Virus record (IMG/VR): IMGVR_UViG_3300020477_001008
Location: 124,001-188,000 of that record
DNA length: 64,000 nucleotides
Strand: one strand, 5' to 3'
Shown here in pieces: positions 18,165 to 59,090 of the stretch. Under the pieces are notes generated by a model. The model was not told the DNA's origin, did not search any database, and saw nothing but the letters and a program-made list of their open reading frames with translations. A program made the translations under genes and the position numbers. How positions within the stretch are numbered: the stretch's first letter is position 1; every line of letters begins with the position of its first letter.

Positions 18165-18341
18165 GTAGTGAATCGTGTTGGGGAATCAGTGTGAAATTCG
18201 CTGGCTCTACCAGGAACCGTAAAGTCGGAGTGCCAACCACTACAAGTCCGCTGTCGAATGAGGGCCTGGGAAAGTCTAGTTCTACAATGAAAAGTTAACA
18301 GTGGCGAGGCACGGCAACGTGTCATAAGGAAACTGTTAATG
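18165..18341 (+). ncRNA. cobalamin riboswitch (5' UTR) with RBS-sequestering expression platform
   Basis: Closing helix GTAGTG/CACTAC, GGGAA, T-loop GTGAAATTC, ACCGT, TGCCA; possible kissing pair CCAGG/CCTGG; TTAACAGT...ACTGTTAA stem encloses SD AAGGA and reaches the ATG; precedes a BtuB-like gene. Confidence 0.8.
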
Positions 18342-47293: not shown

Positions 47294-48229
47294 ATGTCAA
47301 CAAGAAATATATGGGGTATAGGACAAGATACATTAAACTTTCCATCTGATACTATTCCAGTATCAAGTATGATGAGTGATACACAAAAGAATTTAATTAA
47401 TAGTGGATTACTTGATCAAGTTGATTTTACGGATCCTTGGGGAAGAAAATCTAAAGCATATCCTGGTTTTCAAAATCCGCATAATGATACTTTAACACAA
47501 ATTGCTAATGGCTGGAATTCAAGATTATCAGTTATGCCAGATGGTTGGAATGATAGCAACTATGCCAATAGAGCAGTTGTTGATGGAAATGCATTAGGTA
47601 ATGGTTTCAGTGCTAGAAAGTTAACTGATACAGAAATTAAAGATATTGGTTTTGTTGAAGGTATATTAAAAGACTTTACATTTTTAACTAATAGACAATC
47701 TGGTATGGACATTATGGAATATGCAAATCCTAATAGTATGTGGTCAGCATTAGGAAATACAGGTACCTATGGTGCTATGGTTGGTTTACCTACCACAGCA
47801 AGTTTTCCAACTGGTATTGTAGTTCCAGGTGTAACAAATTATCTTGGTGTTGCTAGAACTATAAATGAAATTGGACAAATTTTAAATAATGTACCAACAG
47901 GTTATACTTCTGGTCCTTGTAAATGGATAGAAGATATAATGAAAGCTGTAATGAAAGGTGGTTCAATATTAGCAGATATATTGAATAAAGTACTTGACGT
48001 ATTAGGCATCATTGGATTAGTAAACTCAATACTTGGTATGATTAAAATGTTAATGGATATGATACTTGAAGATCTAAGAACATTAGGATCAGCTATTGAA
48101 AGAATGAAGCAGGCGGCTTTATCTGGATTGTTAGAAGCATTAATGAAAGACCCTTGTATGAGATACTTAATTACGGCAGGGTTGGCAGTAGCTGGTACAG
48201 TAGCAATATTAAAAACAACCTCTCTATAA
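47294..48229 (+). CDS. hypothetical protein downstream of PAAR, hydrophobic helical C-terminus
   Basis: 311 aa, SD AGGAGG; long amphipathic/hydrophobic C-terminal helices. Confidence 0.75.
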   Translation: MSTRNIWGIGQDTLNFPSDTIPVSSMMSDTQKNLINSGLLDQVDFTDPWGRKSKAYPGFQNPHNDTLTQIANGWNSRLSVMPDGWNDSNYANRAVVDGNALGNGFSARKLTDTEIKDIGFVEGILKDFTFLTNRQSGMDIMEYANPNSMWSALGNTGTYGAMVGLPTTASFPTGIVVPGVTNYLGVARTINEIGQILNNVPTGYTSGPCKWIEDIMKAVMKGGSILADILNKVLDVLGIIGLVNSILGMIKMLMDMILEDLRTLGSAIERMKQAALSGLLEALMKDPCMRYLITAGLAVAGTVAILKTTSL

Positions 48230-48269
48230 TTTTTTCTTGTTTTTTCTAAAAATTCGTGTATAATTAACA

Positions 48270-48514
48270 GACAACGTTGAAGTTATCGTAATAGATTATA
48301 TGGACGTGGGGGCAGTACCCACCACCTCCACCATTAAGTTAAAAAGTTTTATGGGGGTGAACTAGGATCGACAGTAATTCAAAGGGTAATGGAGTTGTCC
48401 GGATGGAAGCTCGGTTAACGCGACAAACTTATAAATGCAGATGAAAATCTAGCACTTGCGGCCTAATTCGTTAGGCTAACGGGGTCCGGGGCACCTGGCA
48501 ACAGAACGCCCCAC
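48270..48514 (+). ncRNA. ssrA: circularly permuted (two-piece) tmRNA, alphaproteobacterial type
   Basis: Acceptor piece with T-arm GTGGG-GGCAGTA-CCCAC and CACCTCCA-CCA (ends 48333); 19-nt intervening segment; coding piece starts GGGGGTG at 48353 (G3:U70 pair) with GGATCGAC; tag gca gat gaa aat cta gca ctt gcg gcc taa = ADENLALAA (48437-48466); GGCAACAGAA; 5' end approximate. Confidence 0.93.
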
Positions 48515-48521
48515 TTGTATT

Positions 48522-50268: not shown

Positions 50269-50358
50269 GGAAGGGTGGCTGAGTGGTTGAAAGCACCGGT
50301 CTTGAAAACCGGCAAAGGCGCAAGTCTTTCGTGAGTTCGAATCTCACCCCTTCCGCCA
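50269..50358 (+). tRNA. tRNA-Ser(TGA)
   Basis: Cloverleaf GGAAGGG...CCCTTCC-G-CCA, anticodon arm CCGGT-CTTGAAA-ACCGG, long variable arm, TTCGAAT. Confidence 0.97.
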
Positions 50359-50645: not shown

Positions 50646-51005
50646 ATGACCTATTATGTTAATCAAGCCTGTGTAATGTGTAAACACACCGATTGCGTGG
50701 AAGTTTGTCCAGTAGATTGTTTTTACGAAGGTGAAAATTTTTTAGCAATTAATCCAGATGAATGTATAGACTGTGGAGTTTGTGAACCAGAATGCCCAGT
50801 TGATGCAATTAAACCTGACACACACGATGAACCAGACAAAGACAAATGGATAGAAATTAATAAAAAGTATTCAAGTGGACCAAACAGATGGCCAGTATTA
50901 ACAAAAATGATTGAAGCATTAGAAACAGCAGAAGAATATGCAACTAAAACAGATAAAATAAATTTATTATCAGAAAAACCTGGACCAGGAGATGAAGGAC
51001 GATGA
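50646..51005 (+). CDS. fdxA: 7Fe ferredoxin FdxA ([3Fe-4S]/[4Fe-4S])
   Basis: MTYYV...[43 protein letters not shown]. Confidence 0.95.
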
Positions 51006-53136: not shown

Positions 53137-53562
53137 ATGTACGAATATAGATGTAAAATATTAAAAATCATTGACGGGGATACTGTTGATGTTGATATAG
53201 ATTTAGGTTTTGGAGTATGGATGCACAAGGAACGTGTTAGATTGTTTGGCATTGATACTCCTGAGTCTAGGACTAGAGATAAAGAAGAAAAGAAATACGG
53301 TTTACTATCCAAAAAATTTATACAAGAAAGATATCCAGTAGGATCAAATGCAATATTAATAACGCATAAAGACGCAACTGGAAAGTTTGGACGTATATTG
53401 GGTGAGCTAAAATATAATAATACTACAATTAATAAGAAAATGATACTTGAAGGTTATGCAGTTGCTTATCACGGACAATCAAAAGAAGATGTTGAAGCAG
53501 AACATTTAAAAAATAGAAAAAAGTTGGATAAAAAAATAAGCAAATTTACTAAAGTAAAATGA
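53137..53562 (+). CDS. thermonuclease (SNase-like)
   Basis: IIDGDTVDV.IDLGF, RVRLFGIDTPESRT, GKFGRILG and GYAV.Y.G. Confidence 0.92.
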   Translation: MYEYRCKILKIIDGDTVDVDIDLGFGVWMHKERVRLFGIDTPESRTRDKEEKKYGLLSKKFIQERYPVGSNAILITHKDATGKFGRILGELKYNNTTINKKMILEGYAVAYHGQSKEDVEAEHLKNRKKLDKKISKFTKVK

Positions 53563-53795
53563 GATTAGATCTTCACGGATTTACAGTACACGATGCTTGG
53601 AAAAAATTTAGTGTATGGATTCAAGACGCACAAACAAAGGAAAATGTTAAATCTGTTACAATAGTAACAGGCCAAGGAGAAATCCATAAAGAACTTCCTC
53701 GATGGTGTGATAATATGAATTTTATTAGACAAATACAACCACACTTTCATAATGGTGCTTACCAAATTTATTTTTACAAAAACAGACGTGAATAG
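53559..53795 (+). CDS. stand-alone Smr-domain protein (putative mRNA endonuclease)
   Basis: LDLHG (DxH) and IVTGQG (GxG) Smr signature motifs; 78 aa. Confidence 0.82.
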   Translation: MRLDLHGFTVHDAWKKFSVWIQDAQTKENVKSVTIVTGQGEIHKELPRWCDNMNFIRQIQPHFHNGAYQIYFYKNRRE

Positions 53796-53796
53796 A

Positions 53797-53825
53797 TTGA
53801 CAAAAATTGGATTGTATAGTATATT
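53797..53825 (+). promoter_or_regulatory. sigma70 promoter of queD
   Basis: TTGACA(53797-802)-N17-TATATT(53820-25). Confidence 0.75.
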
Positions 53826-53831
53826 AAACAA

Positions 53832-53882
53832 TGAGGACTTAACGTCAACCCTCTTTAAAAATTCTGCCGTCAATATAAGGAG
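53832..53882 (+). ncRNA. candidate preQ1-I riboswitch
   Basis: GAGG...ACCCTC stem followed by an A-rich TTTAAAAA tail at the predicted +1, upstream of queD; loop CTTA can pair with TAAG of the SD region. Confidence 0.5.
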
Positions 53883-53887
53883 AAAAT

Positions 53888-54352
53888 ATGGGTAAACATT
53901 TTAGTACAAAACATTACGGACATAATATTGGGTTGAGTGCAGTTTTTAGACAACCAAACGCAGACCATTCACATTGTCATTTTTTACACGGATATAGTTT
54001 AGCATTTACATTTACATTTGGTTGTGATGAGTTAGATAATAAAAATTGGGCAGTTGATTTTGGAGGACTAAAACCTTTAAAAAAATGGCTTGAAGACTCA
54101 TTTGATCATAAACTTTGCTTGGATAAAAACGATCCACATCTAGAAAAATTTAAAGAATTAGAAGCAATGGATCTTGCACAGATTAGAATTTTTGATGGTG
54201 TTGGAGCAGAAAAATTTGCCGAACACGCCTTTAATTTTGCAGATAATTTAATTAAAGAAGCAACAAATAATCGTTGTTATGTAGTAAAAGTAGAATGTGC
54301 AGAACACGGAGCCAATTCGGCAATATATCAAATAACTGAAAAAAACCTATAA
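53888..54352 (+). CDS. queD: 6-carboxy-5,6,7,8-tetrahydropterin synthase QueD
   Basis: FRQ..AD.SHC.FLHGY, W.VDFGGLK, FDHK, GAEKFAE and ECAEHGANSAIY. Confidence 0.9.
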   Translation: MGKHFSTKHYGHNIGLSAVFRQPNADHSHCHFLHGYSLAFTFTFGCDELDNKNWAVDFGGLKPLKKWLEDSFDHKLCLDKNDPHLEKFKELEAMDLAQIRIFDGVGAEKFAEHAFNFADNLIKEATNNRCYVVKVECAEHGANSAIYQITEKNL

Positions 54353-56058: not shown

Positions 56059-56264
56059 AAACCAGGAAAGAGAGAATAAAAAAAATTGACATCAACGATG
56101 AAATTAGTGTACAATTAAAAGAAGTAAAAAAAACTATTGATATGGAAGGCATTAATCAAAGAACTCAAAAAACACTGGCACTCAATCACGGAGCAAAAGG
56201 TGAGACAGTAATATCCAAGGCTGACAAAGAATGGTTAGATCAGAAATCAGATAATAATAAATGA
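56046..56264 (+). other. -1 frame extension of the 54361 gene (72 open codons) or small ORF 56142..56264
   Basis: Frame open from 56046 to TGA 56262-64, overlapping the clpX ATG. Confidence 0.45.
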
Positions 56265-57553
56265 GCGATAAAGAGATTAAAATGAAATGCTCGTTCTGTG
56301 AAAAGACTAGAGCCGAATCACATAAATTAATAGCAGGACCTAAAGAAACATTTATTTGCGATGAATGTGTAAAACTTTGCCACGATATTTTAAAAGAAGG
56401 AACAATTGAAAACGAAACAAAAGAGTTTGCTATTCCTGATCCAAAAAAATTACACGGATATTTAAATGAACACGTAATTGGTCAAGATAGAGCAAAGAAA
56501 ATTGTTAGTGTAGCAGTTTATAACCATTATAAAAGAATTGTTAATAATTTAATTAAAGAAGATGGGCAAGACGAAATTGAAAAATCTAATGTTATGATGT
56601 TAGGACCATCAGGTGTTGGAAAAACACTTTTAGCTAAAAAGGTTGCTGAATACGTAAATGTACCATTTGCTATTGCTGATGCAACAACAATAACAGAATC
56701 AGGTTATGTAGGTGATGACGTAGAGAATATTGTAACAAGATTATTGCAACAAGCAGACTTTAATGTTGAAAAAGCTGAACGTGGAATTATATACATTGAT
56801 GAAATAGATAAAAAAGCAAAAAAAGGTGAGAACGTATCAATTACTAGAGATGTATCTGGTGAAGGTGTACAACAAGCTTTATTAAAAATTATTGAAGGAA
56901 CAACTGTTAGAGTTCCGCCACAAGGTGGAAGAAAACATCCTGGTGCAGAAATGATTGAAGTTGATACATCAAATATATTGTTTATAGTTGGTGGAGCATT
57001 TGTTGGTATAGATAAAGTTATTAATAAAAGGGCTAATAAGTCAGCAGGTATTGGATTTAATCAACGAGTAGAAACTGTTGATACAGGATTTGATGAATGC
57101 GAACCAGATGATTTAATTAAGTATGGATTAATACCTGAACTTGTTGGAAGGTTACCAGTTATAGTAGGTTGTCATAATTTAGATAAAAAAGATTTAAAAG
57201 CAATTATGCTTGATGTAAAAAATTCATTGATTAAACAATCTCAACGTTTATTTAAAATGGAAAATGTAAATTTAATTATAACTGAAGATGCAGTAGATTA
57301 TGTAGTAGATGAAGCACACGAAAAGAAATTAGGTGCTAGAGGATTAAAATCTGTGTTAGAAAAAGGTTTATTAGAAATACAATATGACTTACCAGAATAC
57401 AGAGATGGTGGAGTTAGTGAAATTACAGTTACAGAAAAAACGCTCAAAGGAGAAAAACCGATGCTCACTTATGAGTTTGATGCTAAAGATATAAAAGCTA
57501 AAGAAACAAAAAAAGGGAAAAAGGAAGATAACGGTACAACAGGAAAAGAATGA
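56261..57553 (+). CDS. clpX: ATP-dependent Clp protease ATP-binding subunit ClpX
   Basis: Zn domain CSFC...ICDEC; Walker A GPSGVGKT; pore loop GYVG; IDEIDK; RDVSGEGVQ; RKH loop; IGF loop (AGIGF). Confidence 0.97.
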
Positions 57554-58104
57554 AACAAAGATATAGTAATTACGAGTATCAAAAAAAGAAAGCATTAATT
57601 AACGAGAATATTAGAAGTAAAGAAGTTCGTTTAATATTAGAATCATCACAAGAAATAGTAACTACACAAGAAGCATTAAGATTATCTAGAGAGCAAGATT
57701 TAGATCTAGTTTGTGTTAGCACAAAATCAAATCCACCTATATGTAAAATTATGGATTATGGGAAACATCTATATGAACAAAAAAAGAAACAAAAAATTGC
57801 TGATAAAAAACAAAGAGAAGCTATTGTGGATACAAAAGAAATCCAGTTTAGACCAGCAACTGGAATTGGAGATCTTAAAGTAAAAGCTAAAAAGGTACAA
57901 GAGTTTATAGATGATGGAGATAAGGTAAAATTAGTAATGAAATTGCGTGGCAGGGAAAATGCTATGAAGGATTTTGCTATGGAACAATTCAAAAAATTTG
58001 TTGATTTAATTGAGAATTATGACTACGATTATAGGCCAAATATACAGGGAAATAAAATACTTGCAATTTTAAAGAAAGGTGTTATAATAAAGAACAATGA
58101 GTGA
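57550..58104 (+). CDS. infC: translation initiation factor IF3
   Basis: INENIR..EVRLI, DLDLV.VS....[28 protein letters not shown]....RGRE. Confidence 0.95.
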
Positions 58105-58934: not shown

Positions 58935-59010
58935 GGGCGGTTAGCTCAGTTGGTAGAGCATCTCGTTTACACCGAGGGGGTCAAAGGTTCGAGTCCTTTA
59001 CTGCCCACCA
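58935..59010 (+). tRNA. tRNA-Val(TAC)
   Basis: GGGCGGT...ACTGCCC-A-CCA; anticodon loop TTTACAC; TTCGAGT. Confidence 0.97.
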
Positions 59011-59014
59011 TTAC

Positions 59015-59090
59015 GGAGTATTAGTGTAGCGGTTAACACGTCGCCCTGTCACGGCGAAGACCACGGGTTCGAATCCCGTATACTCCGCCA
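59015..59090 (+). tRNA. tRNA-Asp(GTC)
   Basis: GGAGTAT...ATACTCC-G-CCA; anticodon arm TCGCC-CTGTCAC-GGCGA. Confidence 0.97.

What the first reader, a model, noticed from the sequence alone, without database searches (positions are those of the whole stretch)
53797..54352. Candidate preQ1 riboswitch in front of phage queD
Seen: the predicted transcript starts (~53832) directly at GAGG-ACTTAACGTCA-ACCCTC-TTTAAAAA. This resembles the preQ1-I aptamer layout (GAGG-loop-ACCCUC plus an A-rich tail), and loop CUUA can pair with UAAG adjoining the SD (AAGGAG). Established: preQ1-I riboswitches control que genes, and phage QueD/C/E-type enzymes feed 7-deazaguanine DNA modification or queuosine. Inference: a phage feedback-regulating a deazaguanine pathway via RNA would be a second metabolite-sensing RNA in this window.
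Basis: partly seen in the sequence, partly recalled or inferred. Interest (0 to 1): 0.72.

Follow-up and report, generated by a model that had tools for sequence, protein, structure and literature searches.

The report
Pseudoknot riboswitch candidate before phage queD
The leader of this marine phage's queD gene holds a small, strongly conserved RNA pseudoknot that looks like a new riboswitch class with a preQ1-I-like core, found in about 150 fetched related virus sequences in front of 7-deazaguanine synthesis genes, but it is not a recognisable preQ1-I riboswitch and its ligand is unknown.

Summary
It is far more than chance. About 150 related viral contigs carry the same ~45-nt element. Both helices of an H-type pseudoknot covary: 90.7% of cells paired against 27-49% for slid controls. 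A model built without the window finds it at 38.6 bits (next best 13.4).

The second helix is not CUUA:UAAG next to the SD. It is UAACG (53840-53844) with CGUCA (53868-53872), extended by C53846-G53866 and A53847-U53865 across a conserved U.C mismatch.

The Rfam preQ1-I model does not recognise the element. There is no hit in the window, and at best 10.4 bits against a 39-bit threshold in a relative. It does share preQ1-I's P1, its invariant C just 5' of the P1 return strand, and its A-rich L3.

In most relatives the 3' strand of P2 can alternatively pair with the start-codon/SD region. That suggests a ligand-ON translational switch rather than feedback repression.

Relatives encode FolE and QueE but no QueC or TGT/DpdA. 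I read this as a new riboswitch-class candidate sensing an unidentified guanine-like metabolite.

The parts
53797..53825 (+). Sigma-70-type promoter: TTGACA (53797-53802), 17-nt spacer, TATATT (53820-53825). It places the transcript start at about 53832-53833, right at the foot of P1.
   Evidence: 11 of 12 consensus positions. In many relatives a TATAAT-like hexamer ends 7-9 nt before P1 (by eye). No direct TSS data.
53833..53836 (+). P1 5' strand, GAGG.
   Evidence: Pairs with 53850-53853. Covaries as GAGG/CCUC, GCGG/CCGC, GUGG/CCAC, CCGG/CCGG, UCGG/CCGA, GUCG/CGAC and AAGG/CCUU. P1 cells are 93-98.6% paired.
53837..53839 (+). L1 (A, C, U). C53838 is invariant. L1 length varies from 3 to about 13 nt among relatives.
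   Evidence: Alignments A1 and A3.
53840..53844 (+). P2 5' strand, UAACG.
   Evidence: Pairs with CGUCA at 53868-53872; 4 of 5 positions pair in the window, with A53841.C53871 mismatched. All five positions show changes on both sides among relatives, e.g. GGCAU/AUGCC, GACAU/AUGUC, GGCG/CGCC, GGUG/CACC.
53845..53847 (+). Inner extension of P2: U53845 (conserved mismatch with C53867), C53846 (pairs G53866), A53847 (pairs U53865).
   Evidence: C-G is invariant (46/46 and 88/88). The next pair is A-U or G-C and never unpaired: 36+10 and 83+5.
53848..53849 (+). L2: A53848 (variable position) and C53849, an invariant unpaired C directly 5' of the P1 3' strand. It occupies the position of the preQ1-I specificity cytidine.
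   Evidence: Invariant in A1 and A3. The cmscan alignment of relative L029 to RF00522 puts it on the model's conserved loop-closing C. The role of that C in preQ1-I is described in PMC10622847.
53850..53853 (+). P1 3' strand, CCUC.
53854..53864 (+). L3, UUUAAAAAUUC, A-rich. A53861, U53863 and C53864 are invariant.
   Evidence: invariant columns. It aligns to the AUAAAAA tail of RF00522 in relative L029.
53865..53872 (+). P2 3' strand: U53865 and G53866 (pair A53847 and C53846), C53867 (mismatch with U53845), CGUCA 53868-53872 (pair 53840-53844). In relatives this is the 'switching strand' that can instead pair with the AUG/SD region.
   Evidence: pairing; alternative pairing in 88 of 97 distinct leaders.
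53869..53893 (+). Vestigial or weak sequestering helix P3 in this phage: GUCAAUAU (53869-53876) could pair with AUAUGGGU (53886-53893), with the SD AAGGAG (53877-53882) in the loop. It is predicted to be unstable here.
   Evidence: Evaluated at +3.1 kcal/mol, pair probabilities <=0.07. Homologous helices in relatives reach -6 to -13.6 kcal/mol.
53888..54352 (+). QueD-like 6-carboxytetrahydropterin/6-pyruvoyltetrahydropterin synthase family gene (154 aa; motif C-HFL-HGY).
   Evidence: Pfam PTPS E 2.6e-14. phrog_2389 E 2.4e-40. NCBIfam QueD equivalog only 36.3 bits against a cut-off of 89. 54-55% identical to the QueD-like proteins of Burkholderia phage BcepGomr and Synechococcus phage BUCT-ZZ01.

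Best explanation
The queD leader (about 53832-53873) encodes a compact H-type pseudoknot aptamer. I regard it as a previously uncatalogued riboswitch class whose core resembles preQ1-I.

Shown. The architecture is P1 (4-5 bp), a variable L1, and a 7-bp P2 interrupted by a conserved U.C mismatch. L2 is 2 nt and ends in an invariant C. L3 is A-rich and ends in invariant A-N-U-C. The element sits at the 5' end of the mRNA for the QueD-like enzyme, or of X-queD(-queE) operons, in marine and other environmental phages. In most relatives the 3' strand of P2 is also complementary to the start-codon or SD region.

Inferred. A small molecule with a guanine-like Watson-Crick face docks at the P1/P2 junction against the invariant C (C53849). 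Candidates are a 7-deazaguanine-pathway metabolite such as CDG, 7-deazaguanine, preQ0 or preQ1, or a precursor such as H2NTP or GTP. Binding would lock P2. That would keep the switching strand from forming the AUG/SD-sequestering hairpin and so turn queD translation ON.

In this particular AT-rich phage both P2 (about -1.9 kcal/mol) and the sequestering helix (+3.1 kcal/mol) are weak. The size, and even the sign, of regulation here is uncertain.
For: Structure and covariation.
- 46 distinct close leaders: 88-90% of cells paired against 34-59% for slid controls; 9-10 pairs with changes on both sides; 0 of 500 shuffles reach the observed score.
- 88 distinct sequences from two independent retrieval routes: 90.7% paired against 27-49%.
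- Non-circular detection of the window copy at 38.6 bits, E 1.4e-10.

Specific gene association.
- 70 of 80 protein-retrieved loci and 79 of 80 pattern-retrieved loci carry it.
- It always lies directly before queD, or before a first gene immediately followed by queD.
- There is one copy per large genome.
- Eight close relatives with the same promoter lack exactly this module.

Riboswitch-like traits.
- Unpaired positions are invariant.
- Several different expression-platform designs all reuse the P2 3' strand: 88 of 97 leaders against 41 +/- 3.7 in shuffles.

preQ1-I-like register. The local RF00522 alignment of L029 covers P1, the loop-closing C and the A-rich tail. The features that define preQ1-I are taken from PMC10622847.

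Pathway context. Relatives encode FolE (E 1e-85 to 1e-89) and QueE (E 1e-71 to 1e-79), both measured against the cyanophage BUCT-ZZ01 proteins, and one (G010) a phosphoribosyltransferase.
Against: - No ligand binding has been tested, and no Rfam family supports the assignment.
- The window's own leader folds no better than shuffles. Its P3 is predicted unstable, so the ON-switch logic is borrowed from relatives.
- The sequences are related, so cell counts overstate the number of independent events. A3 is fitted to a model and enriched for the GCGG variant by the search pattern.
- The platform analysis rests on MFE predictions and a mononucleotide shuffle.
- The 3' strand of P3 is partly coding (AUG-GCA or AUG-GGN), so some of the complementarity could be constrained by the protein.
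- Metatranscriptome contigs gave no TSS or leader coverage.
- An ON switch for a biosynthetic gene has no obvious known precedent in this pathway.
Confidence: 0.6

Rival explanations
1. It is a genuine but very divergent preQ1-I riboswitch. It binds preQ1 or preQ0 and represses queD (feedback OFF).
For: Same topology, a P1 closed by G-C, an invariant C just 5' of the P1 3' strand, an A-rich L3, and association with a que gene (preQ1-I features from PMC10622847). In the window's own subgroup the SD lies only about 5 nt after P2, with no stable alternative hairpin. A ligand-stabilised pseudoknot could therefore hinder 30S binding.
Against: - RF00522 does not detect the element: no hit, and 10.4 bits against 39.
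- P2 is 7 bp plus a mismatch rather than 3-4 bp, and it does not contain the SD.
- The L1 position next to P1 is variable rather than a conserved U.
- The L3 nucleotide next to P2 is an invariant C rather than A.
- The platform in 88 of 97 leaders predicts ON.
- Near-complete relatives lack QueC and TGT/DpdA, so the phage pathway probably stops at CDG and does not make preQ0 or preQ1.
Confidence: 0.15
2. The pseudoknot is a protein-binding operator. A phage or host protein, possibly QueD itself or a translational regulator, would bind it, as gp32 binds the T4 gene 32 leader pseudoknot. No small-molecule ligand would be involved.
For: Pseudoknotted leaders with conserved loops are used for translational autoregulation in phage T4 and in ribosomal-protein operons (established knowledge). 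The element is restricted to one gene family's leader. Viral lineages could carry a dedicated regulator.
Against: - The element is very small, with invariant unpaired nucleotides clustered at the helix junction.
- It has a switching strand and many alternative platform designs, which is typical of riboswitches.
- It persists when another gene (cupin, methyltransferase-like, or unknown) is placed first in the operon.
- No co-occurring candidate RNA-binding protein was seen.
Confidence: 0.15
3. It has no regulatory role. It is a 5'-terminal stabilising hairpin, a minus-strand terminator-like hairpin, or a chance stem in AT-rich DNA.
For: The scan reports a terminator-like hairpin on the minus strand at 53853-53833. 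The single-sequence fold is no better than shuffles.
Against: All neighbouring genes are on the plus strand. The minus-strand G.U extensions are not conserved. A stabilising hairpin would not need a covarying pseudoknot helix, invariant loop bases or a switching strand. Chance is excluded.
Confidence: 0.03

Closest known systems
preQ1-I riboswitch (Rfam RF00522; types I-III)
   Same: H-type pseudoknot of about 35-45 nt. P1 of 4-6 bp closed by G-C. A highly conserved unpaired C immediately 5' of the P1 3' strand. An A-rich L3 following P1. Location in leaders of queuosine/7-deazaguanine genes. A local cmscan alignment of relative L029 covers P1, that C and the tail.
   Different: Scores at most 10.4 bits against a gathering score of 39. 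P2 is 7 bp with a conserved internal U.C mismatch, built partly from what is unpaired L2 in preQ1-I plus an extra conserved (C/U)UC(U/C)GC segment. L1 is variable in length, and its first base is not a conserved U. The base 5' of P2' is C, not A. The SD is outside the pseudoknot. The platform predicts ON. Found, so far, only in viral contigs.
preQ1-II, SAM-II and SAM-V type pseudoknot riboswitches
   Same: Classical H-type pseudoknots with a longer second helix and pyrimidine-rich L1 nucleotides that could form major-groove triples. Here the invariant C53838 lies opposite the invariant C53846-G53866 pair (inference only). SAM-V is likewise common in marine sequence (recalled, not tested).
   Different: No Rfam match beyond noise: the preQ1-II hit of 16 bits comes from the flanks only. 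The conserved nucleotides and gene association differ.
Translational ON riboswitches such as the Vibrio vulnificus add adenine riboswitch
   Same: The inferred logic is the same. The apo state sequesters the SD/AUG with a strand that the ligand-bound aptamer claims for its own helix.
   Different: A different fold (three-way junction against pseudoknot) and a different ligand. The logic here is inferred from predicted structures only.
freshwater-2 RNA motif (Rfam RF02980, orphan cis-regulatory candidate from metagenomes)
   Same: Weak full-length hits in two relatives (16.4 and 13.3 bits). Both are short leaders ending in AAAGGAG...AUG from environmental sequence.
   Different: Far below the gathering score of 49.9. 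The aligned helices are out of register with the covarying P1 and P2. There is no hit in the window. I treat it as noise.

Membership tests
preQ1-I riboswitch (RF00522) | Matches the Rfam covariance model at or above its gathering score (39 bits). | tested here: not met
   No RF00522 hit on 53830-53875 at E<=10. Six weak hits elsewhere in the 242.6 kb record, none on the element. None on the element in five small relatives. Best case is L029 with a local 10.4 bits.
preQ1-I riboswitch (RF00522) | H-type pseudoknot with a 5-6 bp P1 and an A-rich L3 after P1. | tested here: met
   P1 and P2 covary. L3 is UUUAAAAAUUC with an invariant A. P1 is 4 bp in the window and 5 bp in most relatives.
preQ1-I riboswitch (RF00522) | Highly conserved specificity cytidine at the 3' end of L2, next to the P1 3' strand. 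| tested here: met
   C53849 is invariant in 46 and in 88 distinct sequences. Whether it reads a ligand is untested.
preQ1-I riboswitch (RF00522) | Conserved L1 uridine and L3 adenine that read the ligand's other edge (PMC10622847). | tested here: not met
   The first L1 base is A, U or C. The invariant L1 base is C53838. The base immediately 5' of the P2 3' strand is the invariant C53864; the invariant A53861 lies 3 nt further away.
preQ1-I riboswitch (RF00522) | Short P2 (3-4 bp) formed with the 3' tail, overlapping or abutting the SD, so that the ligand represses expression. | tested here: not met
   P2 is 7 bp plus a U.C mismatch. The SD lies 5 nt or more downstream. The P2 3' strand competes with an AUG/SD-sequestering helix in 88 of 97 leaders.
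preQ1-I riboswitch (RF00522) | Binds preQ1 (and preQ0). | not testable with these tools
   Needs in-line probing, ITC or SPR.
Riboswitch (generic) | Conserved aptamer with covarying helices and conserved junction nucleotides in a 5' leader. | tested here: met
   Promoter 7 nt upstream of P1.
Riboswitch (generic) | Expression platform whose structure is mutually exclusive with the aptamer. | tested here: inconclusive
   Met in relatives by prediction: 88 of 97, in several designs. In the window the alternative helix is evaluated at +3.1 kcal/mol.
Riboswitch (generic) | Direct, selective binding of a small molecule that changes expression. | not testable with these tools
QueD / COG0720 (6-carboxytetrahydropterin synthase) | PTPS fold and membership of the QueD equivalog model. 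| tested here: inconclusive
   Pfam PTPS 53.6 bits against a 22.4 cut-off. phrog_2389 QueD-like E 2.4e-40. NCBIfam QueD 36.3 bits against an 89.25 cut-off. The motif is C-x3-H-G-Y rather than C-x3-H-G-H, but BcepGomr and BUCT-ZZ01 QueD-like proteins, which sit in que clusters, share it.
Phage 7-deazaguanine DNA-modification pathway (FolE-QueD-QueE-QueC-DpdA) | Co-occurrence of folE, queE, queC and a DpdA/TGT transglycosylase. | tested here: not met
   Own 242.6 kb fragment (CheckV 55% complete): only QueD, plus a PP-loop protein with a QueC-like C-terminus at 23 bits. Relatives that are 96-100% complete have FolE and QueE, but no QueC and no TGT/DpdA detectable by Pfam or by the BcepGomr DpdA sequence. 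Divergent DpdA3/4 were not tested.

The most novel reading that the evidence does not exclude
This would be the first riboswitch class known only from viruses. It would be a preQ1-I-like pseudoknot, rebuilt with a long P2 and a switching strand, that turns ON synthesis of 7-carboxy-7-deazaguanine-type bases. The trigger would be a precursor or pathway metabolite, for example H2NTP/GTP or a 7-deazaguanine the host does not make. RNA-based metabolite sensing would then be coupled to phage DNA or nucleotide hypermodification in abundant marine phages that lack a recognisable DpdA.
Probability: 0.4. Interest if true: 0.85.

Novelty: new variant of a known kind. Interest (0 to 1): 0.75.

Why it matters
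Riboswitches are rare in phages, and none is known for the 7-deazaguanine pathway outside bacterial preQ1 classes.

If this element binds a metabolite, it would add a new aptamer class of about 45 nt, among the smallest known. It would give a natural example of how the preQ1-I scaffold can be rebuilt, either for another ligand or for ON regulation. It would also show that large marine phages time or dose a base-modification pathway by sensing a small molecule directly.

It is immediately testable, because the RNA is short, many natural variants are available, and the candidate ligands are few. Finally, the element marks a set of phages (FolE+QueD+QueE, in some a phosphoribosyltransferase, no QueC or DpdA) whose deazapurine chemistry is unexplained.

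Tried and rejected
- **Rfam at gathering thresholds on the whole window.** It finds AdoCbl-II, tmRNA and tRNAs, and nothing at the leader.
- **Permissive Rfam scans of the window leader and two relatives.** Only noise-level hits appear: preQ1-II by its flanks, freshwater-2, and a local preQ1-I fragment.
- **RF00522 over the whole record and five small relatives.** No hit falls on the element.
- **Single-sequence folding.** Uninformative (z = 0.09).
Rejected because the covarying partner lies elsewhere.
- **The minus-strand terminator reading.** Rejected: there are no minus-strand genes and the pairs are not conserved.
- **My first two regex parsers.** They mis-registered P1. I replaced them with CM-based alignments.
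- **The apparent QueC hits.** One is a NAD synthase. The other is a PP-loop protein with only a QueC-like C-terminal stretch.
- **tblastn and phmmer of BcepGomr and BUCT-ZZ01 QueE, QueC, FolE, DpdA and XGPRT against the own record.** Nothing but QueD.
- **Complex prediction.** The QueD trimer + RNA job was accepted but not folded, so it gives no evidence.
- **Metatranscriptome contigs.** They are sparse. One contig from a relative covers 53877-54115 only, with no TSS or leader information.
- **Literature searches for a queD/PTPS-associated RNA motif or a fourth preQ1 class.** Nothing found. McCown 2014 is not held.
- **Genome-collection scan with a specific pattern.** 8 hits, of which only 2 are real, both on short MAG contigs.
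Full report
**1. What is in the sequence**

The window is bases 124001-188000 of a 242.6 kb IMG/VR viral record, which CheckV rates 55% complete. It is AT-rich and shows only weak DNA similarity to pelagimyophage and Melnitz-type phages.

After the stop codon of an Smr-domain ORF comes a promoter-like site, TTGACA-17-TATATT, at 53797-53825. It matches 11 of 12 consensus positions.

Seven bases later the sequence reads GAGG ACUUAACGUCAAC CCUC UUUAAAAAUUCUGC CGUCA AUAU AAGGAG AAAAU AUG.

The ORF 53888-54352 (154 aa) is a PTPS/QueD-family protein:
- Pfam PTPS, E 2.6e-14.
- phrog_2389 'QueD-like', E 2.4e-40.
- It stays well below the NCBIfam QueD equivalog cut-off, 36 against 89 bits.
- Its closest cultured-phage homologues are 54-55% identical. 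They are the QueD-like proteins of Burkholderia phage BcepGomr and Synechococcus phage BUCT-ZZ01, which sit in que gene clusters and share its C-x3-HGY motif.

**2. Is it more than chance?**

Alone, the leader folds no better than shuffled sequence (z = 0.09). Rfam finds nothing there. The evidence is comparative.

Eighty viral loci encode an 83-91% identical protein. Of these, 70 carry the same element immediately upstream, and 2 more are cut by contig ends. Eight lack it cleanly. Some of those eight keep the same promoter, which then abuts the SD.

P1 changes as GAGG/CCUC, GCGG/CCGC, GUGG/CCAC, CCGG/CCGG, UCGG/CCGA, GUCG/CGAC and AAGG/CCUU.

A second helix links the hairpin loop to the sequence after a conserved (C/U)UC(U/C)GC. 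Examples are GGCAU/AUGCC, GACAU/AUGUC, GGCG/CGCC, GGUG/CACC and AACG/CGUU.

Pair counts on 46 distinct sequences:

| Measure | Observed | Slid controls |
|---|---|---|
| Cells paired | 88% | 41-59% |
| Covariation score | 0.65 | 0.05-0.20 |

No shuffle out of 500 reached the observed score.

P2 extends inward across a conserved U.C mismatch. The next pair is an invariant C-G. The pair after that is A-U in UCA...UCUGC sequences and G-C in UCG...UCCGC sequences, and it is never unpaired.

A DNA-pattern scan for the GCGG variant found at least 120 further viral stretches. Seventy-nine of the 80 fetched are true matches at 36-58 bits. On 88 distinct sequences the pseudoknot is 90.7% paired, against 27-49% for slid partners.

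A model built from 56 sequences that exclude the window and its subgroup (R2) detects the window copy at 38.6 bits, E 1.4e-10, with filters off. The next best hit in 64 kb scores 13.4 bits.

**3. Anatomy in window coordinates**

| Part | Coordinates and features |
|---|---|
| P1 | G53833-G53836 with C53850-C53853 |
| L1 | A53837, C53838 (invariant), U53839 |
| P2 | U53840-G53844 with C53868-A53872; A53841.C53871 is mismatched here |
| P2 extension | U53845.C53867 (conserved mismatch), C53846-G53866, A53847-U53865 |
| L2 | A53848, C53849 (invariant) |
| L3 | U53854-C53864, with A53861, U53863 and C53864 invariant |

**4. Comparison with preQ1-I**

According to PMC10622847, preQ1-I riboswitches have these features:
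- An H-type pseudoknot with a 5-6 bp P1.
- An A-rich L3 lying in the P1 minor groove.
- A highly conserved L2 cytidine that reads the ligand's Watson-Crick face.
- A conserved L1 uridine and L3 adenine that read its other edge.
- SD sequestration by the short P2.

This element shares the first three. In relative L029, cmscan produces a local RF00522 alignment that puts P1, the loop-closing C and the AUAAAAA tail in register. It scores only 10.4 bits against a gathering score of 39. RF00522 finds nothing on the element in the window, in the whole record or in five small relatives.

The differences are substantial:
- P2 is twice as long. It recruits what is unpaired L2 in preQ1-I together with an extra conserved segment.
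- The L1 base next to P1 is variable.
- The L3 base next to P2 is C, not A.
- The SD is outside the pseudoknot.

It therefore works like a preQ1-I-type pseudoknot aptamer, but it fails the membership tests. No other Rfam 15 family matches, and the held literature describes nothing like it.

**5. Expression platform**

I folded the region from the P2 3' strand to +15 of the coding sequence. In most relatives it forms a hairpin (P3) whose 5' strand begins inside the P2 3' strand and whose 3' strand covers the AUG or the SD.

Different lineages use different designs: UGCCAUUG/CAAUGGCA, UGUCAUUGUU/AACAAUGGCA, GCCAUUAUU/AAUAAUGG, GCCCAUAA/UUAUGGGU, CCUAUG/CAUAGG, UGUCGUC/GAGAUGGCA and UGUCU/AGACA.

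In 88 of 97 distinct leaders, at least 2 of the 5 outer P2' nucleotides are used this way. Shuffles give 41 +/- 3.7.

P2 and P3 are therefore mutually exclusive. Whatever stabilises the pseudoknot should expose the start site, which makes this an ON switch. This is an inference from predicted structures.

In the window's own subgroup the equivalent helix, 53869-53876 with 53886-53893, is evaluated at +3.1 kcal/mol. The P2 duplex is only about -1.9 kcal/mol, against -7.8 for L033. Regulation in this phage may be weak, or may work differently.

**6. Gene and pathway context**

The element always precedes queD, or an operon whose first gene is directly followed by queD and sometimes queE. That first gene is a cupin, a methyltransferase-like protein or a recurrent unknown protein of 236-243 aa. 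L025 has two copies.

Each large related genome has a single copy.

Gene content of relatives:
- Near-complete relatives (96-100%) encode FolE and QueE.
- One near-complete relative (G007) has a second QueD paralogue.
- The 49%-complete relative G010 encodes a phosphoribosyltransferase.
- None has QueC, and none has a TGT/DpdA detectable with Pfam TGT or with the BcepGomr DpdA sequence.

The window's own fragment has only queD, plus a PP-loop protein with a QueC-like C-terminus.

According to PMC10516641, some phages stop at CDG and use very divergent DpdA3/4. I could not test for those.

A pathway that ends at CDG makes preQ1 an unlikely product-type ligand. A guanine-like metabolite, either a precursor or a 7-deazaguanine, fits the invariant C53849.

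**7. Distribution**

A specific pattern scan of 199,900 species genomes gave 8 hits. Only 2 are real, both on short MAG contigs at contig ends. On present evidence the element is viral.

**8. Transcription**

Metatranscriptome assemblies from the source samples contain scattered contigs from this region. Only one, from a relative, covers 53877-54115. Nothing informs the TSS or the leader.

**9. Verdict**

It is wrong in particulars: the P2 partner, family membership, and probably the sign of regulation. The ligand is open.

I rate it a new riboswitch-class candidate, that is, a new variant of a known kind. My confidence is about 0.95 that it is a conserved structured cis-element, about 0.7 that it is a riboswitch, and about 0.55 that it is ON-type.

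Noticed in passing
window 18165-18243 (+): AdoCbl-II (cobalamin) riboswitch aptamer, 85.1 bits against a gathering score of 36.5. Relatives also encode B12-binding radical-SAM proteins next to queD (L025 608-2107; L105 3048-5012).
   Followed up: partly
window 48221-48515 (+); 50269-50355, 58935-59007, 59015-59087 (+): Alphaproteobacterial-type permuted (two-piece) tmRNA, 152.8 bits, and three tRNA genes in a phage genome.
   Followed up: no
window 56261-57553, 57550-58104, 50646-51005 (+): Phage-encoded ClpX (zf-C4_ClpX + AAA_2), translation initiation factor IF-3 (IF3_N + IF3_C) and a 2x[4Fe-4S] ferredoxin. This is unusual host-like cargo for a phage.
   Followed up: partly
own record G000:C1, about 99975-100722 (-) (L087 1492-2235): A 248-aa PP-loop protein whose last ~55 residues match QueC (23 bits) and phrog_1550 'QueC-like' (E 6.5e-10). 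It could be a divergent QueC-type amidotransferase or an unrelated PP-loop enzyme.
   Followed up: partly
L105 (G007:122000-131000), L106, L107, L166, L154: A cassette of FolE, HIT or phosphoribosyltransferase, [RNA element], QueD (two tandem paralogues in G007) and QueE. G009 also has homologues of two hypothetical proteins found next to FolE in cyanophage BUCT-ZZ01, one weakly glycosyltransferase-like. The presence of a PRTase and the absence of DpdA hint at a nucleotide-level (pre-replicative) route for 7-deazapurines.
   Followed up: partly
L025 2132-2178 and 2929-2975: Two near-identical copies of the element about 800 nt apart. One precedes an unknown 236-aa ORF and the other precedes queD. 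A homologue of that ORF is the first gene of the element-controlled operon in L166.
   Followed up: partly
L010, L012, L013 compared with L007 (about 100 nt upstream of queD): Close relatives share the same promoter (TTGACAGACTTGG...TATAAT), but the ~50-nt element is cleanly absent and the promoter abuts the SD. This is a natural presence/absence pair that would be useful for experiments.
   Followed up: no
L029 2110-2192; L033 2918-3003: Weak full-length hits to the orphan freshwater-2 RNA motif (RF02980), 16.4 and 13.3 bits against a gathering score of 49.9. Probably noise from the shared SD/AUG context, but the motif's genes are uncharacterised, so a distant link was not excluded.
   Followed up: no
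window 53137-53562 and 53559-53795 (+): Staphylococcal-nuclease-like (SNase) and Smr-domain ORFs immediately upstream of the queD promoter, overlapping by ATGA.
   Followed up: no
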